This document shows, piece by piece, positions 4,480 to 58,454 of a stretch of DNA of 64,000 nt. The stretch is from Chiloscyllium plagiosum. Lineage: Eukaryota. The DNA is taken from NCBI RefSeq assembly GCF_004010195.1, contig NC_057746.1:26618070-26682069 (forward strand), given 5' to 3'. Position 1 is the first letter of the stretch; the number at the start of each line of letters is the position of its first letter. The notes under the pieces are model-generated. The model was given only the letters and a program-made list of their open reading frames with translations. It had not been told where the DNA came from and searched no databases. A program made the translations under genes and the position numbers.

Positions 4480-4508
4480 TTGTGCTGTTTGCTCTAGGTT
4501 GGGAACTG
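4480..4508 (-). CDS. Gene A cytoplasmic micro-exon 3 ((A)VPNLEQTAQ), 29 nt
   Basis: ctctatttccacAG | CAGTTCCCAACCTAGAGCAAACAGCACAA | GTAAGA. Phase 1 to 0, compatible with the preceding exon. Confidence 0.55.
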
Positions 4509-4894
4509 CTGTGGAAATAGAGGTTTGAGATGTGTAAGTATCAGAGTTTTACTATGGAACACATGCACAAATACAGTGCTGCACACAAGAAAATACACAC
4601 TAGCACATACACACGCAAACACATGTGCCAGAAATGAAACCCAAGATCTCAGAAGAAGATAATGAGACGATGGCGAACTTATGGAAAGGTGAGCCAGAAG
4701 CAGACATCAGGATTTAAAGAAGAGTTGGATAATCTCCCAGTTGGAAAAGGAATTTGGGATTATCAGTTGTAAGATGTTTAGAAGAGTAGGTTAGATCCTC
4801 CATACATGTCACGTTATTGTTCGTAGAATGGGAGGTAGGACTATTGTTGTATTAACTCAGAATTCTTCACACGTTTGAATTTTATATCTTCAGC

Positions 4895-5195
4895 ACAGTA
4901 GCTCTGTGGTCAGCATTGCTGCCTCACAGTGCCAGGGACCCAGGTTCGAATCCCCTGTCTATGCTGAGTTTGCACATTCTCCCTATGTCTGCGTGGATTT
5001 CCTTTGGGTACAGTGATTTCCTCTGGGTACAGTGATTTCCTCCCACAGCCCAGTGATGTGATGGTTAGGTGGACTGGCCATGGGAAATGTAGGAATAGCG
5101 CAGGGAGTGGGTCTGGGTGGGACATTCTTCAGAGGGTCGGAGTGGACTCAATGGTCCAACTGGTCTGCTTCCACACTGCAGGGATTCTATTGTAC
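4895..5195 (+). mobile_element. HE1-type tRNA-derived SINE
   Basis: tggtcagcattgctgcctcacagtgccagggacccaggttcgaatcc head (B box), gagtttgcacattctccc body, CR1-like 3' tail. Confidence 0.8.
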
Positions 5196-5371
5196 ATGAA
5201 CATGCTAATACTCAGGCACATGCACAAAGACACAAGAGTTGCAACAAAAAGGTGAAAACAAATCCACTTAAAAAAATCTATAAATATATGTTAATTCTTA
5301 TTTTGTTTTATTAAGCAATAATGACAATTAGTGCAAAATACATCAAGTAAATGATATTTAGATTCACATAC

Positions 5372-5400
5372 CATACGTTGTATTGGTTGCACTGTTATCT
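5372..5400 (-). CDS. Gene A cytoplasmic micro-exon 2 ((R)DNSATNTTY), 29 nt
   Basis: gttttgcttattacAG | AGATAACAGTGCAACCAATACAACGTATG | GTATGT. Phase 2 to 1; 99-nt intron to the previous exon. Confidence 0.6.
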
Positions 5401-5499
5401 CTGTAATAAGCAAAACACTTGATATTTGAATTTAAAATTATGCAAATTATGATCTGAATAATCATCATCAAATCAATAATATAATTTAAGTCTGTGTAC

Positions 5500-5518
5500 C
5501 TTTTCAGCCTCAAGATTA
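5500..5518 (-). CDS. Gene A cytoplasmic micro-exon 1 ((V)ILRLK), 19 nt
   Basis: ctaatttatcttccAG | TAATCTTGAGGCTGAAAAG | GTACAC. Phase 1 to 2, in frame with the TM exon; gives a basic juxtamembrane stretch. Confidence 0.6.
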
Positions 5519-5639
5519 CTGGAAGATAAATTAGATAGTCATTAATTTAATTGTTTTAAATTCATTATTTTAAATGTTTTAAACTCATTACTTCGCAGAT
5601 GTGTTTCTTATTAACATACGGCTAAATGATCATGAACAC

Positions 5640-8600
5640 TCCTGAGAGAAGGCAAGGCTGTGGCCTTTAAGGATTGGATTCTGGGTAATCCAAGATGGAG
5701 GACAGGAAAAACTTCTGGCTGTAAAGCTGCTCCTTTTTTTGAGGTATTTTAGGTGTTGGAGGTGATTTCCTCGAATTCCAGGAACAGCAATTATTGTTTT
5801 GTATGCACATTGTTTTGGAACTTTGGAAAAAAAAGTCCAAACAACAGCAGATTTAAAAGGGAGAAGAGCAGACAAAGGAAGCACATGGTGAGGACAGTGC
5901 AGGAGAAAGAGAGAGAGAGAGAACCTGCACAGTTACTGCCTTTGCTGTTTTTGAATTTGTGTATCGCTAGACATCGGAGTGCATCTGGGAAAATTAACAA
6001 ACAGTGAAATTCACAACTAATATTGGAGGAACTGTTGGGTGAAGTTCACAGCACAGAATCAGATAAGTTAATTGTTGTTTTAAGTCTGTCCAAGAGAAAG
6101 ACTGTATTAGTGAGTACAGTGGGTTCTTTCTTGATTAATGTTTTTGGAGATAATCTCTTGATTAAACTTAAAATATAAGCCATTAATAAGCTATTAATTT
6201 AACCAGGGGCAGTGTTTGAAGAGAAATAAGATGGTGTTATTTTTTGGGTCTGTAGATTGTGAAGGAGCAAAAATGGCTTTTGCAGTGATATGTACTTCTT
6301 GTCAGATGTGGGAGTTTAAAGAGAGTTTAAGGGTTACTGTGGATTATATCTGCCATAAATGCTGTTGGATGTGAATCTTATCAGATCGAGTGGATCGGTT
6401 GGAGAGACAGATAGAAGCGATGAGGAATTTGCAACAGCAACAGTATGTGATGGATGGCAGTTATAGAAACGGGGGAAAGTCTCAGATACAGTCACATAGA
6501 TGGGTTAACTCCAGGAAGGGTAAGAGAGGTAGGCATCTAGTGCTGGAGTCTTTCGTGGATAAACCCATTTCAAACAGGTATGCTGTTTTGGAAAATGTAG
6601 GGGGTGATGGATTCACAGGGGAACGTAGCATGAACAGCCAATTGTCTGGTATTGAGACTGGCTCTAATTCAACAAGGAGTATGTCAGCTTCCAAGAGATC
6701 AATTGTGTTAGGGGATTCTGAAGACCGAGGTACAGACAGACGTTGCTGTGGCCAGCAGTGAAAAAGCAGAATGGTGTGTTGTTTCCCTGGTGCCAGGATC
6801 AAGGATGTCTCAGAGAGGGTGCAGAATGTTCTCACGGGGGAGAGGGGCCAGCAGGAGGTCATTGTCCACATTGGAACCAACGACATAGGAAGGACAAATG
6901 TTGAGATTCTGAAGGGAAATTACAGAGAGTTAGGCAGAAATATAAAAAGGAGGTCCTAAGGGTAGTAATATCTGGATTACTTCCAGTCCTACGAGCTAGT
7001 AAGGGCAGGAATAGGAGGATAGAGAAGATGAATGCATGGCTGAGGAGCTGGTTTACGGGAGGAGGATTCACATTTTTTGATCATTGGAATCTCTTTTGGG
7101 GTAGATGTGACCTGTACAAGAAGGGCGGATTGCACCTAAATTGGAAGGGGACTAATATATTGGCAGGGAAATTTGCGAGAACTGCTTGGGAGATTTAAAC
7201 TAGTAAGGTGGTTGGGGGGTGGGTGGCCCAGGGAGATAGTGAGGAAAGAGATCGATCTGAGACGGGTACAGCTGAGAACAGAAGTGAGTCAAACAGTCAG
7301 GGCGGGCAGGGACAAGGTAGGACTAATAAATTAAACTGCATTTATTTCAATGCAAGGGGTCTAACAGGGAAGGCAGATGAATTCAGAGCGTGGTTAGGAA
7401 CATGGGATTGGGATATCATAGCAATTACAGAAACATAGCTCAGGGATGGGCAGGACTGGCAGCTTATTGTTCCAGGATACAAATGCTACAGGAAGGATAG
7501 AAAGGGAGGCAAGAGAGGAGGGGGAGTGGCATTTTTGATAAGGGATACATTACTGCTATGCTAACGGAGGAAATTCCCGGAAATACATCCAGGGAAGTTA
7601 TTTGGGTGGAACTGAGGAATAAGAAAGGGATGATCACCTTATTGGTATTGTCTTATAGACCCCCCAATAGTCAGAGGGAAATTGAGAAACAAACTTGTAA
7701 GGAGATCTTAGCTATCTGTAAGAATAATAGGATAGTTATGGTAGGGGATTTTAACTTTCCAAACATCGACTGGTACTGCCATAGTGTTAAAGGTTTAGAT
7801 GGAGAGGAATTTGTTAAGTGTGTATAAAGACACTTTTCTGGTTCAGTGTGTGGATGTACCTACCAGAGAAGGTGCAAAACTTTACCTACTCTTGGGAAAT
7901 AAGGCAGAGCAGGTGACTGAGGTTTCAGTGGGGGAGCACTTTGGGGCCAGCGACCATAATTCTATTCATTTTAAAATAGTGATGGAAAAGGATAGACCAG
8001 ATCTAAAAGTTGAAGTTCTAAATTGGGGAAAGGTCAATTTTGACGGTAGTAGGCAAGAACTTTCGAAAGTTGATTGGGGGCAGGTGTTCGCAGGTAAAGG
8101 GACGGCTGGTAAATGGGAAGCCTTCAGAAATGAGATAACAAGAATCCAGAGAAAGTATATTCTTGTCAGGGAAGGCTGGTAGGTATAGGGAATGTTGAAT
8201 GACTAAAGAAATTGAGGGTTTGGTTAAGAAAAAGAAGCAAGCATATGTGAGGTATAGACAGGATAGATCGAGTGAATCCTTCGAAGTGTATGAAGGAAGT
8301 AGGAGTATAGTTAACCCCAGGACCTGATCAGGTGTAGCCTTGAACTCTGTGGGAAGCTAGAGAAGTGATTGATGGTCCTCTCGCTGAGATATTTGTCCAT
8401 CAATTGTCACAGGTGAGGTGCCGGAAGACTGGAGGTTGGCAAACGTGGTGCCAGTGTTTAAGAAGGGCGGTAAATGACAAGCCAGGAACTACAGACTGGT
8501 GAGCTGGACCTCAATGGTGGGCAGGTTGTTGGAGGGAGTCCTGAGGTAACAATGAAGATTGAGGAGGGCAGAGCAGTAGTTGTGATCTATATGGACTTCA

Positions 8601-9792
8601 GTAAGGCATTCGACTAGGTTCCCCATGGGAGACTGATTAGCAAGGTTAGATCTCATGGAATACAGGGAGAACTAGCCATTTGGATACAGAACTGGCTCAA
8701 AGGTAGAAGACGGAGAGTGGTGACGGAGGATTGTATTTCACACTGGAGGCCTGTGACCAGTGGAGTGCCACAAGGATCGGTGCTCGGTCCTCTACATTTT
8801 GTCATTTACATAAGTGATTTGGATGCAAGCATAAGAGGTACAGTTAGTAAGTTTGCAGATGACACCAAAATTGGAGGTGTAATTGAAGAGGGTTGCCTCA
8901 GATTACAACAGGATCTGGTCCAGATGGGCCAATGGGCTGAGAAGTGGCAGATGGGGTTTAATTCAGATAAATGCGAGATGCTGCACTTTGGGAAATCAAA
9001 CCTAAGCAGGACTTATACACTTAATGGTAAGGTCCTAGAGAGTGTTGCTGAACAAAGATACCTTGGAGTCGAGGTTCATATTTCCTTGAAAGTAGTGTCG
9101 CAGGTAGATAGGATAGTGAATAAGGCATTGGTATGCTTTCCTTTATTGGTCAGAGTATTGAATACAGGAGTTGGGAGGTCATGTTGCGGCTGTACAGGAC
9201 ATTGGTTAGGCCACTGTTGGAATATTATGTGCAATTCTGGTCTCCTTCATATCGGAAAGATGTTGTGAAACTTGAATGGGTTCAGAAAAGATTTACAAGG
9301 ATGTTGCCAGGGTTAGAGGATTTGAGCTACAGGGAGAGGCTGAACAGGCAGGGGCTGTTTTCCCTGGAGCGTTGGAGGCTGAGAAGTGACCTGTTCGAGG
9401 TTTACAAAATTATGAGGGACATGATAGGGTAATAGGCAAAGTCTTTTCTCTTTGGTCGGGGAGTCCAGAACTAGAGGGCATAGGTTTAGGGTGAGAGGGG
9501 AAAGATATAAAAGATTAGGGTGAGAGGGGAAAGATATAAAAGAGACCTAAGGGGCAACCTTTTCATGCAAAGGGTGGTACTTGTATGGAATGAGCTGCCA
9601 GAGGATGTGGTGGAGGCTGGTACAATTGCAACATTTAAGAGGCATTTGGATGGGTATATGAATAGGAAGGGTTTGGAGGGATATGGGCCGGGTGCTGGCA
9701 GGTGGGACTAGATTGGGTTGGAATATCTGGTCAGCATGGAGAGGTTGGACTGAAGGGTCTGTTTCCATGCTGTACATCTTTATGACTCTATG
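5640..9792 (+). mobile_element. Long CR1 LINE with 5' UTR, ORF1 (Cys motif plus SGNH esterase) and disrupted ORF2 (EN-RT)
   Basis: ORF1 from ~6273: CTSCQMWE...CHKC, VLGDS, CFPGA, VHIGTND. ORF2: CIYFNARGL, YRPPN, VGDFNFP, GVPQGSVLGP, FADDTK. 3' tail atgactctatg. Stops, frameshifts and two internal deletions. Confidence 0.92.
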
Positions 9793-10027
9793 GCTTATTC
9801 TGATGACCATTTACAAATGGAGCCCAACGATTATGTGGGTTGCGCTTCCTTAAATCATGACTGGAGAAACTACAGCTACGTAGTTGGATCAGAGAGGCAG
9901 GAATAGTACACTTTAAATTAGAGAAAATTGAGAAGAAACTTGAAAAGGTATCAAAAAAAGCGGCGATAGGACATTCTAGATTTGCAAAATATTTCTAACG
10001 TTGGAAGGAAAGAGTGACAGCACAGAT

Positions 10028-11797
10028 AGGGAGAGAGTAGGGCCTCTCAAAGATCAGCAAGGCTGACTTTGTGTGGAGATGGAGGAAATTGGAGAGACAC
10101 CAAACGAGTATTTTGCATCAGTATTTACTGTGGAAAAGGACATGGAAGATATAGAATGTAGGGAAATAGATGCTGACATCTTGAAAAATGTCTATATTAC
10201 AGAGGAGGAAATGCTGGATGTCTTGAAACACATAAAAATGGATAAGTCCCCAGAACCTGATCAGGTGTACCCTCGAACTCTGCCGGAATCTAGGGAAGTG
10301 ATTGTTGGGCCTCTTGCTGAGATATTTGTCTCATCAACAGTCACAGGTGACGTGCTAGAAGACTGGAGGTTGGTAAAGGTGGTGCCACAGTTTAAGAAAG
10401 GTGGTAAGGACAAGCCAGGGAGCTATAGACCAGTGAGCCTGACGTCAGGGGTGGGCAAATTGTTGGAGGGAATCCTGAGGGACAGGATGTACATGTATTT
10501 GGAAAGGCAAGGACTGATTCGGGATAGTCAACATGGCTTTATGCGTGGGAAATCATGTCTCACAAACTTGATTCAGTTTTTTTGAAGAAGTAACAAAGAG
10601 GATTGATGAGGGCAGAGCGGTAGATGTGCTCTATATGTACTTCAGTGAGACATTCGACAAGGTTCCCCATGGGACACTGGTGAGCAAGGTTAGATCTCAC
10701 AGAATACAGGGAGAACTAGCCATTTGGATACAGAACTAGCTCAAAGATAGAAGACGGAGAGTGGTGATGGACGGTTATTTTTCAGACTGGAGGCCTGTGA
10801 CCAGTGGAGTGCCACAAAGATCGGGTCCTTTACTTTTCATCATTTATGTTAATGATTTGGATGTGAGCATAAGAGGTATAGCTCGTACGTTTGCTGTTGA
10901 CACCAAAATTGGAGGTGTAGTGGACAGCGAAGAAGGTTACCTTAGATTACAATGGGATCTTGAACAGATAGGCCAATGGGCTAAGACGTGGTAGATAGAG
11001 TTTAATTCAGATAAATGTGAGGTGCTGCATTTTGGGAAAGCACATCTTAGCAGGACTTATACACTTCATGCTAAGGTCCTAGGGAGTGTTGCTGAACAAA
11101 GAGACCTTGGAATGCAGGTTCATAGCTCTTGAAAGTGGAGTCGCAGATAGATCGGATAGTGAAGAATGCGTTTGTTATCCTTTCCTTTATTGGTCAGATT
11201 ATTGAGTACAGGAGTTGGGAGGTCATGATGCGGCTGTACAAGACATTCGTTAGGCTGCTGTTGGAATATTGTGTGCAATTCTGGTCTCCTTCCGATCGGA
11301 AAGATGTTGTGAAACTTGAAAGGGTTCAGAAAAGATTTACAAGGATGTTGTCAGGGTTGGTGATTTTGATCTATACGAAGAGATGGAATAGGCTAAGGCT
11401 GTTTCTCCTGGAGAGTCGGAGGCTGAGGGGTGATCTTAAAGAGGTTTATAAAATCATGAGGGGCATGGATAGGGCAAATGGACAAAACTGTTTCCCTGGG
11501 GTGGGAGAGTTCAGAACTAGAGGACATATGTTTAGTGTGAGAGGAGATAGGTATAAAAGTGACGTAAGGGGCAACTTTTTTCACTCAGAGGGTGGTACAT
11601 GTATGGAATGAGATGCCAGAAGAAGTGGGGGAGGCTGGTACAATTGCAACATTTAAAAGGCATCTGCATGAGCATATGATTAGGAAGGGTTTGGAGGGAT
11701 ATAGGCCAAGTGCTGGCAGGTAGGAATGGATTGAGTTGGGAGCTCTGCTCGAAGGGTCTGTTTCTGTGCTGTACATCTCTATGACTCTATCGCTCTA
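10028..11797 (+). mobile_element. 5'-truncated CR1 LINE (RT)
   Basis: ORFs 10073-10585, 10761-10994, 11129-11611 (YRPVSLTS, SQHGF, GVPQ, LEYCVQFWSP); tail ctctatgactctat. Confidence 0.92.
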
Positions 11798-12153: not shown

Positions 12154-12273
12154 CTTTGTTTTGGTGGATAAGTCCAAACGTAAGAAACATTATAGCTATA
12201 ACCAGTAAGGTCACTGCACCTCCCAGTCCTAGGAATAAGTTGGTGTTCCCGCTATTTTTCTCCAACTCCTTGC
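12154..12273 (-). CDS. Gene A stalk/transmembrane exon, uncharged TM: (R)KELEKNSGNTNLFLGLGGAVTLLVIAIMFLTFGLIHQNK
   Basis: ttaaattcttatttcAG acceptor (12274-12275), 120 nt, phase 1-1, donor AAG|GTTTGC. 24-residue hydrophobic run with no K/R/D/E. In frame with the V exon; not in the ORF track. Confidence 0.8.
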
Positions 12274-12903: not shown

Positions 12904-13245
12904 GTTTCACTTCCAGTTTGGTTCCATTTCCATGTCTTTTCCCTGCTCCAAAGAAGTTTATATTACAGTAATAGGTGTCCGAGTCTTTCTCAATCAAGTC
13001 GGAGATATTAATGAAGATCCTTTTCTTAGCAAATGAATCACTGCCCGATTTCTGCAGCCGAGCTGTGTAAAAGGGACTATCATCCAATTTGTACTCATCC
13101 GATTTACCCCGCGTCCAGTAAGCTGCACCAACTGGAGATGAAGTTCCTTCAAAGTCTAAAACACAGTTCAGTGTGACAGACTCCCCCTCTGTTACAGTTA
13201 TAAAGGGAGGGAACTGGAAGACAGTGATATTCATCTTCGTACCCA
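12904..13245 (-). CDS. NCR3: Gene A V(J)-type Ig domain exon, NKp30/NCR3-family receptor
   Basis: ttttctttctaccAG...AAAC|GTAAGT, 342 nt, phase 1-1. B-strand Cys (VTLNC), C-strand Trp (GAAYW), DSDTYYC, and joined J-like GxGT (GAGKRHGNGTKLEVK), resembling NKp30 ...VLGLGVGTGNGTRLVV. Family-level call; orthology not established. Confidence 0.85.
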
Positions 13246-15941: not shown

Positions 15942-15999
15942 CTGCGCTTCTCGGAAAGCTGATCGACAGCATTAGGACCAGCAGTTGTCGGAAAACCAT
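15942..15999 (-). CDS. Gene A signal-peptide exon MVFRQLLVLMLSISFPRSA
   Basis: agagcATGG start; 19 codons + G then GTGAGT donor (phase 1, matches V exon); hydrophobic core. Possible acceptor tttctctcgccttctAG at 16038-16039 upstream. Confidence 0.8.
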
Positions 16000-17159
16000 G
16001 CTCTCTGAATTTGTGAGGAGGTTGCAGATAAGTGAATCTAGAAGGCGAGAGAAACACATTATTAATCGTTCTCGAAGCGTGAATGGAATTATTTGTGGTC
16101 TCCACGTAGATCACACAGGATGTGCAATTCGTGGCTGCAACTGAATCGCGTCGCCTTTAAAGCCATCTCCTTTAGAGTTCTGGAATTGGAGATAAACATA
16201 TTGATGACAGTGTTCGATAAGTCGGAAACGCAGACCATGAAACAAGACAACTACCCACAGGTCTTGTAGGTGTGATATTATGTTTAGGTCGTGGAGAGTC
16301 CCTACCCGCCAGCTGCATATTTCTCCGTTACGATGGCCTTGATAATGCACAAAGGGGATGAAAGAAAGGACGGGTTCCCTTAAAGAGGGGACCAAAAGTT
16401 TCCATTCACCTAATCGTGGTCCTGTGATTCCAGCCACAATGGTAACCAAGACTCAGGGATGTGCAGGCCAGATGGATGGTAAATGCAATTTCCAGGGATA
16501 GTGTGGGGACTTGGCCTGGGTGGGTTGCACTTCAGAGGATCGGTGCAGATTCGATGGGCCGGATGACTTCTACCTACATTGTAGGAACTCTATGTTTCTA
16601 TGCAATGTTTACGGTTATTGCTATCGTCAACATTTAGCCAGCAGCCCAGGCCCTGAGCGAAGGTTTGCAGGTTATTGGCACCTGCGCTCAATGAGCTAAT
16701 CGGCGCGACAGTCAGCATTCATGACCCTTCATCAGGCGGTAGTGAACTCCCCCCACCACGCCGCCCTCAGGCGATCAAGGTTAGTGCTCTGGCATTGAAG
16801 GCGCCGCGTTTCGGGAGAAGCGTTGAACAGCGGATTGGTAGTTTGTTCAAAATGTCTGTCCGGCGGTGAAAGTGCTTTCCGCAGTCTTGCGAGGCGCTGC
16901 ATAATCCTTTGCGTTTACTTTAAACGTTCGATCACTTCGTTTCAAACTACAATCCGCAGGGAGTCACGTTGCTTGTTGATGTGTGTTGAGATTGAACGTA
17001 GATTTTATGCTGGTTATGCACATATTCTCCGAGATCAATTTAAACAATTAATGATCTTTATCTGCATGCGAATCATCCGTAGAGCCCAACCGTTCATGTT
17101 AGTTATATTTGTTAATCTAACTTGATTGAAAAGGACGGATGAATGACAAATGCAATTAA

Positions 17160-19922: not shown

Positions 19923-19924
19923 TT

Positions 19925-22849: not shown

Positions 22850-24780
22850 AGAATATAGAACATAGAACAATACAGCACGGGAACAGGTCCATCAGCCAAC
22901 TATGCCTATGATGACCTTGATGCTATTAGAGTCATAGAGATGTACAGCATTGGAACAGACTCTTCCATTCAATGCATCCATGCTGATCAGATATCGCAAA
23001 CAAATGTTGTCCCCTTTGACCTATATCCTCTAAACCCTTCCTATTCTATACCCATCCAGATGACTTTTAATGTTACAATTTTACCAGCGTCCAACACTTC
23101 CTCTGGCAGCTCATTCCATACACGCACCACCTTCTGCTTGAAAACGCTGCCCCTTACGTCCCTTTTAAATCTTTCCCCCCTAAACTAATTCAATCTGCCT
23201 GCACATGGCTTGTATCCCCCGATTCACTTTGTCGATCTAATTTCCTCCCCTGGCAGTGCATTCCAGGCACCTCATACTCTTTTGTAAAAAATACTTTTCT
23301 CACACATCTCTTTTAAACGTTCTCCCTCTCACCTTAAACTTATGCCCCTAGTATTTGACGCTCGAAGAAAGATGTCGACTATCCACCCTATCCTTGTCTC
23401 ACTTAATTTAATACACTTCTGTTAGGGAACGCCTCAACTTTTGATGCGATAGTGAAAAAAAATCCAAGTTTGTCCAACTTTCCCTTATAACTAATACAAT
23501 CCAGTCCAGGTAACTGGTAAAATTATTGCACCATCTCCAAAGCCTCCACATCCTTCCTATAGTGTGTATAGAGTATACCAAATCCGTCTGACCAAAGTTA
23601 TATACAGATGCAACCTGACTTGCCAACCTTTATATACAATGGCCCAACCAATGAAGGTGAGAATGCTATTTGCCTTCCTTATCACTTTATCCACTTCTGT
23701 TGTCACCTTCAAGGAGCTCTGGACATGGGCCACAATATCCCTCTCCATATCAATGCTTCTGGGTGTCCTGCCACGTACGTAATCTTTCCACCTGCATTTG
23801 ACCTCCCAAAATTCATCACATCACGCTCGTTGAGATTAAATACTATCTGCCATTTCTCCATCCAATTTTTGAACTAAATCCATATCCTTCTGCATCCATT
23901 ACAATCCTTCATGACTAAACACAACTCTATCAATTCTTGCATCATCTGCAAGTTTAATAATCAGACTAAGGGCATTTCATTCAAATCATTTGTATATGGA
24001 TGTAGATTTGATCCCTGAGCTGGAAGGTTCATTTTCAGACATTTCGTCACCTTACTAGGTAATATCTTCAGTGAACCTCCAGACGACGCACTGCTGATGA
24101 TTCTTGCTTTCTATTTATATGTTTGGGTTTGTTTGGATTAGTGAAGGCATTTCCTGTGGTGATGTCATTTCCTGTTCTTTTTCACAGGGTGTGGTAAATG
24201 GGGTCCAAATCAATGTGTTTGGTGATAGAGTTCTAGTTGAAATTCTAGAAGCATGGCATTCCAACGCTATCAACAAACCCATTGACTCGGACCAGTAATT
24301 ATCAGCAGTGCCTCGTCCAGAGGCTCACTGAAGATGTTACCTAGTATGGTGATGAAACGTCTGAAAATGAATCTTCCAGCTCAACGAGCAAACCTACATC
24401 CAGACCCTCAACCTGAGTTACAAATCTTCCCAAAACTCGCTCATTTATATATACTACAAACAACAGAGGTCCCAGAACTGATCGTTGTGGAACACCACAG
24501 GTCACTTGTCTCCAGTCAGAAAAGTACCAGTCCAAACCTGTCTTCTATGACGAAGCCAATTTTGCATCAAACTTGCTTACTCACTATGCAACTCATGCAA
24601 ATTGATCTTCTGGACCAGCCTACCATGAGGAACCTTGACAAATGCTTTAGTCAAGTCCACGTATGCCTTATCTTCACTAATCATCTTCGCCACTTACTCA
24701 AAAAACTCAATCAAGTTAATGAAATACACCTCCCTGCATACAATCATGATGACTATGATCTCTGTTTCCAAAATGCTCCC
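22850..24780 (-). mobile_element. Nested CR1 fragments (minus)
   Basis: 3' tails atagaacatagaac at ~22850 and tagagtcatagag at ~22928; RT pieces such as 24341-24535 GVPQRSVLGPLLFVVYIN. Confidence 0.8.
23998..24440. mobile_element. Penelope-like element remnant (family C) with GIY-YIG C-terminal remnant and inverted ends
   Basis: Inverted ends (ggatgtagatttg...caaacctacatcc). Peptide EILEAWHSNAINKPID typical of PLE endonuclease C-termini. TSD tcatttgtatat (23986-23997) / tcatttatatat (24441-24452). Hammerhead motif 24325-24364. Confidence 0.75.
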
Positions 24781-28235: not shown

Positions 28236-29461
28236 ATTAATCAAATCTAACGAATATTCATTTTGTAGCACAGAATTTTGAATATTGTTGAAAAAAGACA
28301 CATTGTGTTGAAGCTTTTGATCTTGCACTCATCAGCAGAACCCTGTCCAAAAAAAGGAGCAAATTCTGCAGCAACACTGAGAGACTTGAACTTAGGTCAT
28401 TCATCTAGGACTTTAGCTCATGACCCAAGAATATAGCTGCCATGCTACCCACAATTGAGAGTAATGAAGAAAACCTGCCATCTCTCTCCCAGTGGTCCAT
28501 GAGGATTACTACATTTTATTTTGCCACATTTTCATTATTCTTAGTTTGGCATATTGAACATTTTGATTAAAAAAAACCTACGTATGATATCTCATTGATC
28601 TAGCCATCTACAACACATAGAGCTACGTGCACTCAATCTGTTCTTAACTGTCTGTTTATTCATTTGTATGTGTCACTGGCTGGGCCAGCATTTATTTCCT
28701 ATCCCTAGTTGCCCTTGGGAAAGTGGCATTGAGCTATCTTCTTGAACCACTGTGGTCCACTTGCTGTGGGTTGACCCATAACACCATTAGGGAGGAAATC
28801 CCAGGATTTTGACCCAGCAACAGTGAAGGAACGCTGATATATTTCCAAGTCATGATAGTGAGTAGCTTGGAGGGGAACTGGACGGTGGTGATGCTCCCAT
28901 ACATTGGCTGCCCTTGTCCTTCTAAATGGAAGTGGTCATTGGTTTAGAAAATGATGTCTGAGGATCTTTGGTGAATTTCTGCAGTGCACCTGGGAGATCG
29001 TTCACACTGCTGCTATTGAGCGTTGGTGGTGGAGAAAGTGGATGATTGTGGATGCAGTGGTAATCACGTGGGCTGCTTCATGCTGGATAATGTCAAGCTT
29101 CCTGGGTGTTGCTGGAGCTGTCTTCATCCAGGCAAACGGGGAGTATTTCATCACACTCCAGACTTATGCCTTGCAGATGGTGGACAGGCTTTGGGCAGTG
29201 AAGAGATGAGTTACTCCCCACAGCAATCTTCGCCTCTGACCAGCTCATGTTACCACTGTGTTTATTTGGTGAGTCCAGTTGAGTTTCTGGTATGATGACT
29301 CCCAGGATGTTGACATTAAGGGATTTAGTGATGGTAACACAATTGAATGTCAAGAGGCGGTTGTTAGATTGTCACTTACGGTGGTAGTAATAGCCTGGCA
29401 TTTGTATATTACTTTCCACTTGTGAGCCCAAGCCGAAGTAGCCCAGTTCTTATTGCATTTT

Positions 29462-48145: not shown

Positions 48146-48753
48146 ACGTATTAATAAAGCCTATTATGTTTTCCTTACTAATACTCCAACGTGAATTCAA
48201 CACGGAGAACATAGTCATTCCACAAGCTGTAGATAGATATACAATATGCATCGCTATCTTGCTAAGAAAGAATCTTATCCTTTTTATCGGGTTCAGTGCT
48301 GCAGCTTTGTAGGAACATTGAACTGAGGTTCGGGAATAGGGCGTTCAGTCTTTTGAGCAGGCTCCACTATTCAGTAAAATCAAGACTGATCTCGCTGTAA
48401 TCTCAGCTCTACTGTGTCCCTTGCCCCAGATAGCCATTGACTGCTTTGCCCATCAAAAATCCATTTAGCGCAACTTTGTGTACAACCTCCACTACTTCCT
48501 GGGGAAGAGAATTCCAAAGACGAAGAACACTGAGAGTAAAAAGACGTTATCTTCATCTTTGTCTTATGTAGAAGACTCTTGTTTTTAATCTGTGTCCCCT
48601 GGTTCTAGAGTATATTGCAGGAATAACCGTTATTTTAATCATTACTAATTCTCTCCTTTTCCTTGTCCTGATGTCTATGTTGGTCAACTCAAAAGTAACA
48701 TTTATCTGTGGAGTGGTGTCTAATGTACAAATATATAACAGTAAATACATTAC

Positions 48754-49628: not shown

Positions 49629-49689
49629 ATGATGATTTTAATTTGGCAATTTATGACGATGCAGCTCATTTTCTTTCCACTAATTGTTG
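49629..49689 (+). CDS. Gene B signal-peptide exon MMILIWQFMTMQLIFFPLIV
   Basis: 20 codons + G then GTGAGT donor (phase 1, matches V exon); hydrophobic; F-P at the same distance from the donor as in the gene A leader. Acceptor-like ctaattcttcctgcAG at 49614-49615. Confidence 0.7.
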
Positions 49690-51004: not shown

Positions 51005-51675
51005 GATTAGATTCCCTACAGCGTGGAAACAGGCCCTTCGAACCAAAAACATCAAAGGAACAGGAGAATCGACGTTTCGGGCATAAGCCCTTCTTCAGGA
51101 GCTCTCCTGCTCCTTTGATGCTGCCTGACCTGCTGCGCTTTTCCAGCAACACATTTTTAAGCTCTGATCTCCAGCATCTGCAGTCCTCACTTTCTCCTTC
51201 GAACCAACAAGTCCAAAGAGTAGGAAATGTGTTGCTGGAAAAGCGCAGCAGGTCAGGCAGCATCCAGGGAACAGGAGAATCGACGTTTCGGGCATAAGCC
51301 CTTCTTCGGGCTTATGCCCGAAACCTCGATTCTCCTGTTCCCTGGATGCTGCCTGACCTGCTGCGCTTTTCCAGCAACACATTTCCAGCTCTGATCTCCA
51401 GCATCTGCAGACCTCACTTTCTCCTCAAGTCTAAAGAGTAACCCACACAGACTAATTTCTCTCTGACTAATGCACCTAACGCTATGGGCAATTTAACAGG
51501 GCCAATTCACCTGGACTGCACACCTTTGGACTGTGGGAGGAAACCAGAACACACGGAGGAAACACACGCAGACACAGGGAGAATGTGCAAACTCCACACA
51601 GACAGTCGCCCGAGGCAAGAATCGAAACTTGCACCCTGGTGCTGTGAGGCAGCAGTGCCAGCCACCGTGCCACCC
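51005..51675 (-). mobile_element. HE1-type SINE carrying two PLE family B insertions (51047-51196 and 51223-51425)
   Basis: SINE tail attagattccctacag, head gccaccgtgcc; TSDs cttcgaaccaa (51036-51046 / 51197-51207) and caagtc[c/t]aaagagta (51208-51222 / 51426-51440). Confidence 0.85.
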
Positions 51676-53310
51676 TCAAGAAACTTGCTCGCCTGTTTGA
51701 AAATGTAACAAAAACTTGATAAAAGATAACACTGTTAATGTGATGTATATGGAATCCAAGAAAGGTTTTGATATCGTGTCATGCAACACACTTACGAGGA
51801 AATCATCAGGTGATGATGTGTTGGTGGCATCATTGTGCAAAATTGGTTTAAAGACAGGAATAAGAGAGTAATTGTCAATAGATACTTTTGGGGCAGGAGG
51901 GAGGTTTGTAGTGGCGTTCCCCAGGTCCTGTTATTGGATCCCTTGCTTTCCTTGATATATATTAATGATATATTTCTTGGTGTGTAGGATACTTTCAAAG
52001 TTTTCAGATAACACAAAACTTAGAAAATTGTAAACTGTGCGAAAGATGTTTCAGAAAGTTAAAAGGATAGCGACAAATTGATGGAGTGGGCAGATATGTG
52101 GATGATCAGTTTCAGTGCATGGAAAACTTACGTGACACATTTTGGTAGGATAACAATGAAATGCAATATAAAACAGAGGGCATAATTCTAAGATGGGGTG
52201 AAGGTGTGATGGCAGAAAGACCTGGGTGCATACGCGCATAAATCATTGAAGGGGCGGGATAGACAGAGAGAGAGAGAGAGAAAACAGTAAGCAAAGCATA
52301 ATGTATCCTCAACTGTTTTAGATTAGATTCCTAACAGTATGGAAACAGGCCCTTCAGCCTAACCAGTCCACACCCTCCGAAGAGTTAACCACCCAGATCT
52401 ATTTCCCTCTTACTAATGCACCTAACGCTATTGGCAATTTAACATGGCTAATTCACCTGGACTGCACACCTTTGGACTGCGGGAGGAAACCGGAGCACCC
52501 AGAGGAAACCCATGCAGACACGGGGAGAATGTGCAAACTCCACACAGACTGTCGCCCGAGGCCAGAATCGAACCTGGGACCGTGAGGCAGAAGTGCCAAC
52601 CACTGAGCCACCGTACCACCCTCAAGTAACTTGCTCGACTTTTTGAAAAGTTAACATAAAGGCTTGATAAAGGGTAACACCGTTAATGTGATGCATATGG
52701 AATCCAAGAAGGTTTTGATACCGTGTCATGCAACAGAGAGTGTAAGAGCAAGGAGGTGATGCTGAAATTGTACAAGACACTTGTCAGACTTCAGAAGGAG
52801 GATTGTATGCAGTTCTAGGCAGAATTATCAGAAGGATCTAAATGTTTCAGAAAATGTTTACAGGTATGTTTCCAGGAATGCAGACATTCACTTATGAGGA
52901 AAGAATTAAAAATATAGGACCGTTTCCTTGAAGAGAAGGAGACTAAGAGAGAACTGATAGAGGTTTCAAACTCACGAGCAGATTGGATAGAGCAGATAGT
53001 GAGAATGCGTTCCAGTTTATAAACGGACCAAGAGCAAAAGGACATAGATTTGGCATGGTCTGCAAAAGAAGTGAGGGTGTTGTAAACCACAACCTTTCCA
53101 CTCAGTGTATAGTTAGGGCAGATGGTGGAGGTAGGTACAATTGAGTCATTGAGCAGAGCATTGGATGATGAGTTGGATTAAAAAAAAATAAGCTGAAAAT
53201 GTATGGGGAGAAAACCCCAAGAGGTTGTATGTTGGCAATGATGCTCAACTAACATGTCTGTGCAGTCACAATTGACGAATGGCCTTCTTCTGCACTTTAC
53301 AATTGTGTTA
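51676..53310 (+). mobile_element. Old CR1 RT/3' fragment interrupted by an HE1 SINE copy (52318-52622, -)
   Basis: Decayed gtggcgttccccagg...ttggatccc, ttttcagataacacaaaact (FADDTK-like), tgtacaagacacttgtcagac, 3' UTR. Confidence 0.7.
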
Positions 53311-53977
53311 TACTCCAGAAGGTCCCGTGCCTCGGAGACCAACTAGGTTAGGCCACTCTCTGGTAGTTACTTTTAAAAAAAGTTAACTGACCCATCCAGC
53401 TTTGAAATCCAACGATTAAACCTAATATATATCTGTATACCCTACACCTCTCACCATGATACATAACTTGGAAGCATTGCAAACCGTGCTAAGTATTGTG
53501 TAAAAGGACATTGACAACTTGTTGGAGTGACTAGCTGTTTATTGCAGAGAAGTGTGAGATAATACACGGAGAGATAGTATAAAATCAAGTTTACCATTCA
53601 AAGACGTCTGCAATAGCAGAGAACTCTGGATGTGTACCGTATGTGTATAAAATATTACACTTATCGGACAGGTGCATAGCACAGTCAATAACGCATATTT
53701 TGTCTCAGAGCTGATTGATCGGAGATGTGTATAGGAACAAGGGTTTAATGTTAACAAGGTACAATCCAGCTTTATTTCATTCTCAGACTAGAACAAATTA
53801 ATCGTGAAAGTTCTTTTTTTGTTTACTTGTCAGCAATTTATCCCCCAGTTTTCTTGGCTCACTAGTAATATCCCAGTGTATAGTATGATAATTGAATTCT
53901 CCACTTTCACTCGTCCTTTGCTCTCCCATTTTCTGCAACCAGCTTGTAAATTCACTCACAACAATTAGTTATGTTGA

Positions 53978-54250
53978 TCGGATTCCCCTACAGTATGGAA
54001 ACAGGCACCTTAGGCCAACAAGTCCACACCGACCCTCCAAAGAGTAACCCACCCTCTTACTAAATGCACCTAATACTATAAGTGATTTCGCTTAGCCAGT
54101 TCCCCTGACCTGCACATCTTTGGACAGTGGGAGAAAACGCACAGAGAGAATATGCAACCTCCAAGCAGATAGTTGCCCGATGCTGGAATCGAACCTTGGC
54201 CCTTGTTGCTGTGAGGTAGTAGTGCTAACCACTAAGCCACAGTACGGCAG
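53978..54250 (-). mobile_element. HE1-type SINE
   Basis: gattcccctacagtatggaaacagg...gtgctaaccactaagccac. Confidence 0.8.
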
Positions 54251-55464
54251 AAAAACTGCATCAGAAGTTTTGTGATGCAGTGGTAGCGTCCCTTTCTGAG
54301 GTGTCAGTCCCACTCCAGCGTATGAATGCCTCGATAGTACGTTCATAACATTAGCAAAACAGGTTAGTGAAAGACGGCGAATCTCCTCCTAAGCCATGCT
54401 TGTTGAAGGGTGATGTCCTTCAAGCTGCAGCTTCTATGACAGGCTGGCCACTTCCTGGAGAAAAAAAAGCGATGAAAATACCCATAAATATGGACTTTAT
54501 CAAGCCCAGTTGTTATTATATAAAGGAACAGCTCAAAGTCAAATATAGCAACTTAATTCTAAGAAAGTGGATTTCGTCTTTGTCTCCTCAGTATACCCCA
54601 TCCCTACTCATACTATACATCATTACGTTCATCCTTCATTTTTCTACTTCTCCTACCTTTTAGACAACTTTCTAGCCACGGATATCAGGCTTTCAGTCGT
54701 CGTCCTGTTGAGGAAAGGCCTGTATTCTTGGCATTATAATATAGTTCCACCCGCCAACGTCTGTCTGCAGAACATCGAACTTACTTGCATGTGCATTTCG
54801 AACACGGTCCCCAAAACCATATTGCACTTCCTCGGATTTCTCTGCTTCCTGATCCTCAACCATTAAACAAAATTCTCTTTAGCCCTCCGTTCAATAGTTT
54901 CCCATTTCTAGTTTTCCATGTTTATGCAATCCAGATTCCCACCTCTCCTGCTATATCAGTTAAATTCAAGTGGCAAATTCTTGCTTCTTGTGGGAGCTAT
55001 ATATTTGTAGCGGATTTTACAAATGTGGGCCATTGTTTGTCAATTGAGGGGCTCCGTTTGCGAAATGTAGCAAGAACATTCTCAAATTGCTCGAAAATGT
55101 TACGAATTAGAAAATAACCATCCAGAGACAAGAGATAATAGAAAAATGAATACCATTTAATTCAGTATCAGAGGTAACCTATTTGCATTTACATTTAATT
55201 TTGGTTCAGAAGAGTAGACAGAGAGATGGTACAACACAACCAGTATGTAACTTGCTTAACTTTTCCAGAGCATGACTGGTTTGCGAACGACTTTTTAAAA
55301 AGTACTTCTTTGCGCCTGTTTGGCTATTCAGTATCTGCTGCTCTGTTCATTTTCTACATACTTATATGATGTAACATGATATTTACAGTTACCACCGAAA
55401 ATTGTATGATAGCAGCAGAGAGGAATGGAATTCATCATTTATCATGTTATTATTTTTCTATTAG

Positions 55465-55806
55465 TGGGTACGAAGATGAACGTCACTGTCTTCCAGTTCC
55501 CTCCATTAATAACTGCAACAGAGGGGCAGTCGGTGACGCTGAACTGTGCCTTGGATTTTGAAGGAACTCTATCTCTGATTGGTGCAGCTTATTGGACACG
55601 GGGTAATCTGGATGGGTACAAATTGGATAATAGCCCCTTTTATGAAGCTCGGCTGCAGACATCAGACAGTGATTCATTTGCCAACAGCAGGATCTTCATT
55701 AATATCTCCGACTTGATTGAGAAAGACTCGGACACTTATTACTGTCATATAATTGTACTTGGAGCAGGGAAAAGACATGGAAATGGCACCAAACTGGAGG
55801 TGAAGC
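55465..55806 (+). CDS. NCR3: Gene B V(J)-type Ig domain exon, NKp30/NCR3-family receptor
   Basis: tatttttctattAG...AAGC|GTAAGT, 342 nt, phase 1-1. VTLNC, IGAAYW, DSDTYYC, IIVLGAGKRHGNGTKLEVK, closely matching NKp30 IGSVTW / VEVLGLGVGTGNGTRLVV. Family-level call. Confidence 0.88.
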
Positions 55807-56229
55807 GTAAGTAATAAATAGACACAGTGCTTTGCAAATGAAAACTGCTCGAATTTACAGATGCAAGATTGATTTGATCCGGTTTTCTCAGTTTTAATTA
55901 CCTTACCACTCATTTAGCGGATTCTCTTAAAATAATGCAGCCAATTGACGTCTTTCGCACTTAGCACTGGACGGCATGACCAATGGAGGGAAATAGATGC
56001 GGTAAAATGAGACTATTCAATACTACCTTAACAAAACGCTAAAATCTGTCCTAAATTGTTGTCAATAAGTGCATGCCGCCATCTAACCAGGTGCAATAAT
56101 TTTATACGTGAATGACATGCATTAGAGTTGAATGATATGACGTATAATTTAAAGTGTTTCGTTATTAAGCCTGTTCCTACATGATAGTTAAATTTGAAAC
56201 TATATAAGCACGCCGAGAAAGTTCAGCGG

Positions 56230-57375
56230 GGAGGACTGTTTCGTAAAGTTAGATCACATGGGAGCCAGGGAGTGCTAGCCAATTGGATTAATATAAAATT
56301 GGATTGACGGTAGAAGACAGACGGTGGTCGTACAGGGTAATTTTTGGATTAGAGGCTTGTAACCAGCGATTGATTTTTGGTCTGGAAGCCGGCAACCAGT
56401 GGTGTTCTGTCGGGATCAGTGCTGGGTCCATTGTTGCTTTCCTTTCAAATAAACAATTTGGATGAAAATATAGGATGCATAGCTGGAAAGTTTGCGGATG
56501 CTGCTGCAATTGGTGATACATTGAACAGGGAAGAAGGTTATCCAATAGTACAGCAGGATCATGATCAGCTGGGCTAATGAACTTAGGTGTGGCAGATAGA
56601 GTTTAATTTAAATGTAAGGCATGGACTTTTGGTAAAACTAACCAGGGCAGGACTTCAACAGTTAATGGTAGGGCCCTTGGATGTGTTGTTGATCAGAGAG
56701 ACCAAGTGGTTCAGGTCCTTGAAAGTCACAGTTAGATAGGATGGCTTCCCTCATTGGTCATTGAATATTTATAGTTGGGATTTCAAGTTGCGACTGTACA
56801 GGATATTGGTGAGGCCACTTTTGGACTACTGTGTACAGTTCCACTCGCCTGCCATAGGAAGGATACTATGAAATTGTAAAAGCGTGGAGAAATGATTTGC
56901 AAGGATGCTACCCGGACTGGAGGGTTTGGGCTACAAGGAGAAGCTGGATAGGCCATGACATTTTACCTTGCAACGTAGGAGGTTGAGGGGTGATGTTAGA
57001 GATTTATAAAATCATGAAGACGTGAAAAATGTAAATTGAAAAGCTGTTCTCCCGGGGTGGGGGAAGGGGGTGGTGGAGGGAGGAGGGAGGTGTGGGTGTG
57101 TTCAAATCTAGATAGCATAGGTTTAGGGTGAGGGGGAAAATGTAAAAGGGACCTACTTGACTACTGCTTCGCACAGAGGGTGGTACATATATGAGGAGTG
57201 AACTGCCAGAGGAAGTGCTAGACGGAGATATATTTACAATATTGAAATGACATTTGGACAGGTACAAGAATAGGACATATTTAGAGGGATATGGGCGAAA
57301 CGTAGGCAAATGGAATTACTTGAAATTGGGAATCGAATTGGACCAAAGGGTCTGTGTTCATGCTCTATGACACTA
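56230..57375 (+). mobile_element. CR1 RT/3' fragment in gene B intron
   Basis: ORF 56377-56577 SGVLSGSVLGPLL...KFADA; decayed 3' UTR to ~57375. Confidence 0.8.
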
Positions 57376-58041
57376 ATAATCATATAAGGAAATCGATTTA
57401 CTTCAAGAAGTATAGCAAGTAAATGAAGCTTAATGTTTACTATTACATATCATTTCTCATTTTCTTTTGTCTGCCAAATATTTCATGAAGCAACTTAATA
57501 TATTTAAAGCTTTTCTAAATGCATGGTTCACAGAGCTGAGTATTGTCGAGCAAAATGTGAATAATGTGGCTATCGCTGAGGACTGACTTGGGTGAACATT
57601 TAATTCCCGACTCAGAGTGATATCAACATAATTGCTCGAAGGAAGTTGACTGAGATTTCTATCGTGGAAACAAGTTCTGTTGAGGTTGCACACTGGAAAA
57701 TTGTGAAATTATGAATGCAATTAAATCCAACTGAGATTCTAGAAATAATGCAATTCAAGAAACAAACGTAGTTTCAGAAATATCAGTTTGTTGCAATATG
57801 CGTCTGTCAATGCGTTCATGAAATGATCAAGTAACCATTCATCTATTTTTTAGTGAATGGAAGGGGCTGACATTTGAGAATCCATGTACAAGAAAGATGA
57901 TATAAGTTGGATACCACTCAAAGTACTTTTATTCATATGACGAGGACTAGAATATTTTACAACTCTGTATATAATACTCATTTTTGACCCTAACTATTAA
58001 ACTGGTAGAAATGAAATGGTTCTTGTGTTTAATCATTTCAG

Positions 58042-58170
58042 GAAGGATAAACATATCAAATTGCGTAGGACTCAAGACTGCTTTATCATTTGTACTTCGA
58101 ACAACAATAATCTTGCTGGTTTTTGTACTCGTTATTATACTAATTTGCAAACTGGAATACAAACGCAATG
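58042..58170 (+). CDS. Gene B stalk/transmembrane exon with Cys and TM Arg: (R)RINISNCVGLKTALSFVLRTTIILLVFVLVIILICKLEYKRN
   Basis: gtttaatcatttcAG acceptor, 129 nt, phase 1-1, AATG|GTAAGT donor. Arg in the N-terminal part of the hydrophobic segment, as in NKp30 (VLLLRAGF). Confidence 0.85.
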
Positions 58171-58374
58171 GTAAGTATCATTACAAATGCAACTAAACAC
58201 CTAAATTTCAATTCGTGGTGTCATGGTTTATTAAATTGGTGCAGCTTGGTCAGGTGCAATATCAATACTCTGTTGTGTCGCTGATAATGGTTTCTATGAG
58301 TTTTCCCATGACTGTTGTAAGACTGACTAAACTGAAGTGTGTACCTCTTTACCCCCATGCTTTGTGTTAAACAG

Positions 58375-58454
58375 GACAGAACATTTACAAACATCTAAGT
58401 TCTTTTAACTTTATTTTGGATGGAACTACAAGATATCTCTTCATTGTGCTTTAA
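58375..58454 (+). CDS. Gene B candidate cytoplasmic exon (G)QNIYKHLSSFNFILDGTTRYLFIVL*
   Basis: Acceptor cctctttacccccatgctttgtgttaaacAG with ctgactaa branch-like sequence upstream; phase 1. Alternatives: intron read-through (GKYHYKCN*) or acceptor at 58713-58714 (G*). Confidence 0.4.

What the first reader, a model, noticed from the sequence alone, without database searches (positions are those of the whole stretch)
4480..58454. Head-to-head paired NKp30/NCR3-like receptors: near-identical ectodomains, opposite signalling modules
Seen in sequence: two divergently transcribed leader-V-TM genes, with start codons at 15999 (-) and 49629 (+). Their V domains differ at 21 of 115 residues by hand count. 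Gene B has an Arg in its TM (ALSFVLRTTIILLVF) and a short tail. Gene A has a fully uncharged TM (LFLGLGGAVTLLVIAIMFLTFGLI) and a longer multi-exon tail containing Tyr. Established: mammalian NKp30 is a single activating receptor whose TM Arg couples to CD3zeta/FcRgamma, sharks have an expanded NCR3 family, and paired families such as KIR, LILR, PILR and Siglec-11/16 combine similar ectodomains with opposite signalling. Inference: this is an activating/non-activating (possibly inhibitory) receptor pair built on the NKp30 scaffold. I do not know of this pairing having been described.
Basis: partly seen in the sequence, partly recalled or inferred. Interest (0 to 1): 0.85.

Follow-up and report, generated by a model that had tools for sequence, protein, structure and literature searches.

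The report
Paired shark NKp30-like receptor genes
A bamboo shark carries two neighbouring NKp30-like immune receptor genes with nearly the same outer domain; one is a known brake-type gene, and the other looks like an unannotated trigger-type partner that still lacks transcript proof.

Summary
Both start codons, both V exons (21 of 115 residues differ), both TM strings and the divergent orientation are as stated.

The window is Chiloscyllium plagiosum. Gene A is the annotated LOC122541531: every in-window exon that tblastn aligned is 100% identical to it. It is 77% identical in the V domain to nurse shark NCR3 QTT61901.1. Its TM is uncharged. The RefSeq tail carries an ITIM (IHYAKV) and an ITSM (TEYATI), but that last coding part lies left of the window. 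So A is an already known inhibitory-type NCR3.

Gene B is the new part. Its V exon is intact, has good splice sites, and is 97% identical to a C. punctatum V-only model. Against A it gives dN/dS 0.28, and it is not evolving faster than A. An in-phase Arg-TM exon 2.2 kb downstream scores best of all such candidates in the window.

B has no transcript evidence, no full-length annotation, and an unproven leader.

Verdict: a probable inhibitory/activating pair, and a new member of known kinds. First readers of this scan noted other NCR3-like genes in this genome (unchecked). I could not read the key paper (Kinlein 2021).

The parts
15942..15999 (-). Gene A leader exon (coding part), Met at 15999; an in-frame upstream ATG lies at 16059
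   Evidence: sequence; 9/9 donor. tblastn of P0005 residues 1-19 and P0158 residues 32-65 lands here.
12904..13245 (-). Gene A V exon (VJ-type V-set domain, J-like GNGTKLEV)
   Evidence: 100% identical to P0158 residues 66-181.
12154..12273 (-). Gene A stalk/TM exon, uncharged TM
   Evidence: Matches P0158 and is 68% identical to P0005.
5500..5518 (-). Gene A cytoplasmic micro-exon (VILRLK), 19 nt
   Evidence: AG/GT borders. ILRLKR hit. Order fits P0158.
5372..5400 (-). Gene A cytoplasmic micro-exon (RDNSATNTTY), 29 nt
4480..4508 (-). Gene A cytoplasmic micro-exon (AVPNLEQTAQ), 29 nt. The rest of the tail (41 residues with ITIM and ITSM) is not in the window.
   Evidence: No tblastn match in the window for the last 41 residues of P0158.
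24583..24684 (-). First coding exon of the RefSeq model of gene A, derived from a LINE reverse-transcriptase fragment (probably 5' UTR or a model artefact)
   Evidence: P0158 residues 1-34 match here at 97%, and match other LINE copies at 40-48%.
49629..49689 (+). Gene B candidate leader exon (unproven)
   Evidence: It is the only candidate on this strand within 25 kb upstream of V-B that has a 7/9 donor. It is not similar to leader A.
55465..55806 (+). Gene B V exon (VJ-type V-set domain)
   Evidence: 97% identical to C. punctatum chiPu_0012136.
58042..58170 (+). Gene B predicted stalk/TM exon with Arg in the TM (LSFVLRTTIILLVFVLVIILI), a stalk Cys and an NIS site
   Evidence: Phase 1 in and out, donor 8/9, best hydrophobicity in the window. 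No transcript evidence.
58375..58454 (+). Gene B candidate tail exon (speculative). The alternative is read-through of the TM-exon donor, giving GKYHYKCN, a stop at 58194-58196 and ATTAAA at 58230.

Best explanation
The window holds two divergently oriented members of the shark NCR3 (NKp30) family.

Gene A (minus strand, 15999 down past the left edge of the window) is the annotated C. plagiosum gene LOC122541531 and an orthologue of nurse shark NCR3. It has a leader, a VJ-type V domain, a short stalk, an uncharged TM, and a tail built from micro-exons. In the RefSeq protein that tail ends with an ITIM (IHYAKV) and an ITSM (TEYATI). By analogy with other ITIM/ITSM receptors, ligand binding would lead to tyrosine phosphorylation and recruitment of SHP-1/2, damping the cell (inferred).

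Gene B (plus strand, V exon 55465-55806) has a V domain 81% identical to A's. It most likely splices to the exon at 58042-58170, which encodes a stalk with a Cys and a TM with an Arg in its outer third, followed by a short tail. Such a receptor would pair through the Arg with an Asp-bearing ITAM adaptor (CD3zeta or FcRgamma type) and activate the cell (inferred).

Together they would form an inhibitory/activating pair that sees the same or similar ligands. Shown here: the exons, their phases, the homology, the ITIM/ITSM of A's annotated protein, and selection on both V exons. Inferred: expression and splicing of B, adaptor coupling, shared ligand, and opposite signalling.
For: Family:
- Pfam V-set for both V exons.
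- NKp30 is the top PDB hit for V-B (6e-9) and for the clade profile.
- In one search the closest of 159 hits is nurse shark NCR3 (77% identity; name). Many further hits are named NCR3-like.

Gene A:
- All tblastn-aligned in-window exons are 100% identical to P0158, and the exon order is the same as in P0005.
- Uncharged TM, ITIM and ITSM.
- Tyr motifs of the YAKV / EYATI type recur in Mustelus, Scyliorhinus and nurse shark.

Gene B:
- Open V exon with AG/GT borders.
- Present and 97% identical in C. punctatum.
- dN 0.10, dS 0.35, ratio 0.28 against A, with 20 synonymous differences spread along the exon.
- B carries fewer derived residues than A (4 v 9, 8 undecided; p 0.27), so there is no sign of decay.
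- The TM exon is in phase and is the best of about 8 in-phase hydrophobic candidates in 128 kb.
- K/R-TM short-tail NCR3-like proteins exist in other fishes (4 of 16 examined), so this architecture is natural for the family.
- The role of the TM Arg in human NKp30 is stated in PMC5371597 (passage seen).
Against: - No RNA support for B. Across 55301-61300, X6 laid no reads at all, X5's 66 partly fitting reads lay only on repeats, and the contigs of X7 covered only repeats; none touched the V or TM exon. Only 2% and 6% of the single-cell runs were read, and their tissue is unknown, so this is weak evidence.
- No C. plagiosum protein containing V-B appeared in the two searches that would have admitted it (73-233 aa; 131-416 aa). 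The C. punctatum model is the V exon alone.
- TM-B has no detectable homologue in the window. Its likeness to other NCR3-like TMs is marginal (shuffle p 0.01-0.39).
- Leader B is unlike leader A and could be a chance ORF.
- Introns of A and B are unrelated, so B may be a copied V exon in a foreign setting.
- The ITIM/ITSM of A is taken from the RefSeq model.
Confidence: 0.5

Rival explanations
1. Gene B is not a working gene. Its V exon is an orphan copy, a relic of a duplication or an exon-sized conversion product, kept open by chance or by past conversion from A. The Arg-TM exon and the leader are fortuitous ORFs in AT-rich DNA. Only gene A, the inhibitory NCR3, is functional, and there is no pair.
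For: - No RNA reads on B.
- No full-length annotation in two species.
- Likeness between A and B stops within about 10 nt of the V exon ends.
- Leader-like ORFs are common enough to arise by chance.
- In-phase hydrophobic ORFs occur about once per 20 kb of strand.
- TM-B has no clear homologue.
Against: - V-B is open with intact splice sites in C. plagiosum. The protein is 97% identical in C. punctatum (3 of 112 residues differ), the same rate as A's orthologue pair (97.3% over the V domain).
- dN/dS is 0.28.
- B is not more derived than A.
- TM-B is the single best candidate in the window on both hydrophobicity and donor score, and it sits on the right strand, in the right phase, 2.2 kb downstream.
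Confidence: 0.3
2. Gene B is expressed but is not a simple adaptor-coupled activator. It may use another downstream exon, be secreted as a V-only decoy, or carry its own tyrosine motifs: the candidate tail exon 58375-58454 reads YKHL-x12-YLFI, with TRYLFI fitting the ITSM pattern. The pair would then not be 'opposite' in the classical sense.
For: - The donor after the TM exon is strong (8/9), so a further exon is plausible.
- The candidate tail has two YxxL/I motifs.
- Scyliorhinus X2 isoforms of the A type skip the TM exon altogether, which shows splice variety in this family.
- Heterodontus P0154 combines an Arg in the TM with an ITIM.
Against: - The tail exon has only a moderate polypyrimidine tract, and its AT-rich hydrophobic reading cannot be told from chance.
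- Read-through gives a short tail with a nearby ATTAAA, as in the short-tailed Polypterus and Acipenser NCR3-like proteins.
Confidence: 0.15

Closest known systems
Nurse shark NCR3 family (Kinlein et al. 2021, Immunogenetics 73:333; QTT61901.1 = P0005)
   Same: - Gene A is its orthologue: 77% identity in V, and the same exon order of leader, V, uncharged TM, micro-exon tail and terminal Tyr motif.
- B's V is 76% identical to it.
   Different: - No deposited nurse shark protein with this V type and a charged TM turned up (7 significant of 496 candidates, and only P0005 from nurse shark).
- I could not read the paper, so I cannot say whether it describes activating subtypes or pairs. What I know of its content is recalled from the abstract.
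Mammalian NKp30 (NCR3)
   Same: - Single VJ-type V domain, and best PDB match.
- Gene B's predicted TM has an Arg in the outer third, as human NKp30 has for CD3zeta/FcRgamma pairing (PMC5371597, passage seen).
- NCR3 lies next to AIF1 in mammals (PMC1654159, passages seen). A first-reader note places AIF1 near this cluster (s1-885861, unchecked).
   Different: - Mammals have one activating gene. Here gene A is ITIM/ITSM-type with an uncharged TM.
- The V-domain match to human NKp30 is modest (E about 1e-11 with the profile).
Paired receptor families (KIR, LILR, PILR, SIRP alpha/beta, Siglec-11/16)
   Same: - Linked genes with near-identical ectodomains: one with ITIMs, one with a charged TM and a short tail.
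- A hint of exon-limited conversion: the shared derived residues are mosaic.
   Different: - Different scaffold: a single VJ V domain, said to be MHC-linked.
- The activating partner is only predicted.
- What I say of these families is recalled knowledge, not tested here. SIRP alpha/beta V domains are the next-best PDB family after NKp30 and one antibody fusion chain.
Teleost NITRs (novel immune-type receptors)
   Same: VJ-type V domains on receptors that come in ITIM and charged-TM forms (recalled). NKp30 and NITR are listed together among joined-VJ IgSF members in PMC11599192 (passage seen).
   Different: None of the 20 representative hits whose names I looked up was called NITR; most were NCR3-like. 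Membership was not tested further.

Membership tests
NCR3 / NKp30 family | Single V-set Ig domain encoded by one exon, with a germline-joined J-like motif (GxGTxLxV) | tested here: met
   Both exons are Pfam V-set. GNGTKLEV sits at the exon end in both. The motif definition is from PMC11599192 (passage seen).
NCR3 / NKp30 family | Closest relatives by sequence are NCR3 proteins | tested here: met
   - Clade profile: the four top PDB sequences are NKp30, about 1000-fold better than the next hit.
- V-B alone: NKp30 is on top.
- V-A alone: NKp30 ranks 15th, behind shark VNARs.
- The nearest public protein is nurse shark NCR3.
NCR3 / NKp30 family | Linkage to the MHC class III region beside AIF1 | not tested
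   No AIF1 was found in the window. The only lead is first-reader note s1-885861 (an NCR3-like gene next to AIF1, left of the window). The mammalian gene order is from PMC1654159.
NCR3 / NKp30 family | TM arginine that couples to CD3zeta/FcRgamma (the mammalian form) | tested here: inconclusive
   - Gene A: no charged residue in the TM, so not met.
- Gene B: Arg present in a predicted exon.
- Coupling itself cannot be tested with these tools.
NCR3 / NKp30 family | Binds a B7H6-type ligand | not testable with these tools
Paired inhibitory/activating receptors | Linked genes with highly similar ectodomains | tested here: met
   81% amino-acid and 86.5% DNA identity over the V exon, with leaders 33.6 kb apart in divergent orientation.
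Paired inhibitory/activating receptors | One partner has an uncharged TM and an ITIM/ITSM tail | tested here: met
   P0158 (= gene A) carries IHYAKV and TEYATI. The exon bearing them is outside the window.
Paired inhibitory/activating receptors | The other partner has a charged TM, a short tail without ITIM, and is expressed | tested here: inconclusive
   The exon is predicted and statistically favoured. There were no RNA reads and there is no annotation.
Paired inhibitory/activating receptors | Opposite signalling on a shared ligand | not testable with these tools
   Needs binding and signalling assays.

The most novel reading that the evidence does not exclude
Gene B is a working, adaptor-coupled activating twin of an inhibitory NCR3, kept alongside it since before the bamboo shark / nurse shark split, with its ligand-binding loops (FG region) kept in step with A by exon-limited gene conversion. 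That would make NKp30, the one NK receptor traceable across jawed vertebrates, a paired-receptor system in sharks. The mammalian activating NKp30 would then be the surviving half of an ancient inhibitory/activating pair.
Probability: 0.3. Interest if true: 0.6.

Novelty: new member of a known kind. Interest (0 to 1): 0.42.

Why it matters
NKp30 is recalled as the NK receptor with the deepest traceable orthology, and in mammals it is purely activating. This locus, together with the public models examined here, shows that in sharks the commonest form is inhibitory: 10 of 16 NCR3-like proteins carry an ITIM or ITSM. If gene B is real, an activating copy with almost the same ligand-binding domain sits beside the inhibitory one.

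That gives a concrete pair for asking whether paired-receptor evolution (a pathogen or ligand arms race, decoy-driven activating copies) already operated on this scaffold in cartilaginous fish. It also bears on which half of the pair mammals kept.

The practical gain is modest. There is one unannotated candidate gene to add to the bamboo shark annotation, and one RefSeq model (LOC122541531) whose N-terminus looks wrong because it begins in a LINE-derived exon.

Tried and rejected
- **RNA evidence.** The look-up of sequencing runs found no RNA holder. The four holders (X1-X4, 55-60% of words) behave as DNA. Read laying on 55301-61300 gave no reads on gene B's exons in X5, X6 or X7, and RNA reads only on a high-copy hairpin repeat near 58.9-59.1 kb. 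This is uninformative rather than negative.
- **More copies of the exons in the window.** There are only two V exons, no A-like TM near B, and no B-like TM near A.
- **Homology of TM-B to TMs of 8 NCR3-like proteins.** Local alignment scores had shuffle p of 0.01-0.39, which is not convincing for hydrophobic segments.
- **A leader for B homologous to A's.** None was found.
- **Rest of A's tail inside the window.** It is absent. Two weak matches, at 28530-28568 (-) and at 3-38 (-), lack splice acceptors or significance and were dropped. The AG-preceded ORF near 1170 (-), read by eye in the phase left by exon 6, stops after one codon, so I do not follow note s1-884011's 'possible ITIM terminal exon' there.
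- **Tree of 14 V domains.** The A pair and the B pair each group (the B pair at 97/96), but their order relative to nurse shark and Heterodontus is unresolved. I left out multi-V proteins and tetrapod hits.
- **Rfam on the whole window.** 0 matches.
- **Literature.** Searches found no open paper that describes activating/inhibitory NCR3 pairs in cartilaginous fish. 'Chiloscyllium' + 'NCR3' gave 0 papers. The two key papers (Kinlein 2021; Flajnik 2012) are not held. Supplements were not consulted. So 'not described' is not established.
- **Not used.** The third homologous-protein search, because the TM-B ORF of 73 aa would only admit proteins of 40-128 aa.


Full report
**What is there**

The window is shark DNA; typical shark SINE and LINE copies fill most of it. 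Two V-set exons stand out: 12904-13245 on the minus strand (gene A) and 55465-55806 on the plus strand (gene B). Each is 342 nt with an AG acceptor and a GTAAGT donor, enters and leaves in phase 1, and ends in the J-like motif GNGTKLEV. They differ at 46 of 342 bases and 21 of 113 whole codons, and the two split codons agree.

**Species and gene A**

A search with V-B found C. punctatum proteins at 97% (chiPu_0012136, V exon only) and 82% (chiPu_0012135). A search with the nurse shark protein P0005 found P0158, 'uncharacterized protein LOC122541531 [Chiloscyllium plagiosum]'.

P0158 matches the window at 100% over the V exon, and over the TM exon apart from the split-codon edge. It also matches over the leader and the three micro-exons (borders read). 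The window is therefore C. plagiosum, and gene A is an annotated gene.

Its nearest representative among 1.84 billion proteins is P0005 (77% identity, E 1.6e-48). P0005 is QTT61901.1, 'natural cytotoxicity triggering receptor 3 [Ginglymostoma cirratum]'. I take it to belong to the MT914154-914161 nurse shark NCR3 set cited in PMC12227049 (passage seen); that link is my inference.

The exon order of A is:
- leader 15942-15999
- V 12904-13245
- stalk/TM 12154-12273
- micro-exons 5500-5518, 5372-5400 and 4480-4508

The last 41 residues of P0158 (…IHYAKV…TEYATIH) have no match in the window, so the gene runs over the left edge. A regex scan finds one ITIM (IHYAKV) and one ITSM (TEYATI) in P0158 and no charged residue in its TM.

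The RefSeq model begins with 34 residues from a LINE reverse-transcriptase fragment at 24583-24684. The nurse shark protein starts at the Met that corresponds to 15999, which I take as the true start.

**Family**

Both V exons are V-set. V-B alone hits human NKp30 first in the PDB (6e-9). V-A alone hits shark VNARs first and NKp30 at rank 15 (1.3e-5). A profile of nine V sequences of this clade puts the four NKp30 sequences first (2.3e-11 to 6.6e-11). Next comes an antibody fusion chain at 2.5e-8, then SIRP beta/alpha.

Of the 20 representative hits whose names I looked up, 10 are called NCR3 or NCR3-like. They come from sharks, rays, Polypterus, sturgeon, lungfish and a frog. Membership in the NCR3 family is well supported by sequence. 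Linkage to AIF1 rests only on an unchecked first-reader note.

**Gene B**

- **V exon.** It is intact. Against A it gives dN 0.10, dS 0.35 and a ratio of 0.28, with 20 synonymous differences spread along the exon, so it is not a fresh copy.
- **Rate of change.** Polarised with six outgroup sequences, 9 of the 21 differences are derived in A, 4 are derived in B and 8 are undecided (p 0.27). B is not decaying faster than A.
- **TM exon.** The exon 58042-58170 lies 2.2 kb downstream. It has an AG acceptor, is in phase 1 at both ends, and has an 8/9 donor. It encodes a stalk with NIS and a Cys, a 21-residue hydrophobic core of mean hydropathy 2.9-3.0 with an Arg near its outer end, and a basic stop-transfer stretch. 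In a scan of both strands for in-phase, open, hydrophobic 90-180 nt exons there were about 8 loci. This one has the highest hydropathy and the best donor, and the real TM-A exon was recovered as a control. I estimate that a chance exon of this quality in the few kb after V-B has odds of a few percent.
- **Tail.** It is open. Read-through gives GKYHYKCN, a stop, and ATTAAA at 58230. Splicing to 58375 gives 26 residues with YKHL-x12-YLFI. I cannot choose between the two.
- **Leader.** The leader at 49629 is the only candidate on the right strand within 25 kb that has a good donor. But such ORFs occur at 5 loci per 128 kb of strand, and it is unlike leader A.

**Evidence against B**

- No RNA run holds the stretch.
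- X6 laid no reads at all, X5 (2% read; X6 6% read) only 66 partly fitting reads on repeats, and X7's contigs covered only repeats; nothing lay on V-B or TM-B. X1 is DNA and covers all of it.
- No C. plagiosum protein with V-B came up in the length ranges 73-233 aa (4 significant of 7 candidates) or 131-416 aa (7 significant of 496).
- DNA likeness between the two genes stops within about 10 nt of the V exon ends. 200-nt flanks score like shuffles.
- TM-B has no convincing homologue.

**History**

The tree of 14 V domains groups the two species' B copies (97/96) and places the two A copies together, but it does not resolve A, B, nurse shark and Heterodontus. The shared derived residues are mosaic. 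Three (positions 17, 38, 57) join A with nurse shark, three (97, 103, 106, the FG region) join A with B, and none joins B with nurse shark. This hints at a duplication older than the bamboo shark / nurse shark split, with later conversion of the 3' part of the exon. Three against three is too few to decide.

**Context in the family**

Of 16 NCR3-like proteins examined:
- 10 have at least one canonical ITIM or ITSM.
- 2 more have long tails with near-motifs.
- 4 (Heterodontus P0018, Hemitrygon P0071, Polypterus P0031, Acipenser P0046) have K or R in the TM, tails of 8-31 residues and no ITIM.

Both signalling types therefore already exist in public models of this family. Inhibitory-type NCR3 is not new, and gene A itself is known. 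What I did not find in any search is a description of a linked pair with near-identical ectodomains. The two papers most likely to hold it could not be read.

**Verdict**

The most likely reading (about 0.5) is an inhibitory NCR3 (certain as a gene, inhibitory by motif) beside a probable Arg-TM activating twin. The main rival (about 0.3) is that B is an orphan V exon. This is a new member of known kinds (NCR3 family; paired receptors) and of moderate interest.

Other genomes' loci and a fold comparison could therefore not be used.

Noticed in passing
window 24583-24684 (-): The RefSeq model of LOC122541531 (P0158) opens with 34 residues from a LINE reverse-transcriptase fragment spliced to about 16044. 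The N-terminus of the model is probably wrong. The nurse shark protein starts at the Met matching 15999.
   Followed up: partly
window ~58880-59075, with relatives near 47.9-48.2 and 50.9-51.5 kb: A hairpin (inverted-repeat) element of very high copy number. Summed contig depth is 592,636 in DNA run X1 and 34,232 in X7. It accounts for most of the few single-cell RNA reads that were laid. No Rfam match.
   Followed up: partly
window 48609-48740 (+): An in-phase, open, hydrophobic ORF with fair splice signals, 0.9 kb upstream of the candidate leader of gene B. I took it as a chance hit of the null scan.
   Followed up: no
P0003 and P0161 (Scyliorhinus canicula LOC119976539 and LOC119976781, X2 isoforms): Two close paralogues of the gene A type whose X2 isoforms join the V exon directly to the cytoplasmic micro-exons, skipping the TM exon, while keeping the ITIMs. 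A TM-less form with ITIMs is odd.
   Followed up: no
window 12904-13245 v 55465-55806 and their flanks: The exons are 86.5% identical but the flanking introns are unalignable, although dS is only 0.35. Together with the mosaic shared derived residues, this suggests exon-limited conversion.
   Followed up: partly
window 55613 (V-B exon) in DNA run X1: A T>C difference in another data set of the same species falls on a third codon position (GAT>GAC, Asp by my own count). No difference was seen in the TM-B exon. About 17 differences and small indels lie in the 2.2 kb intron.
   Followed up: no
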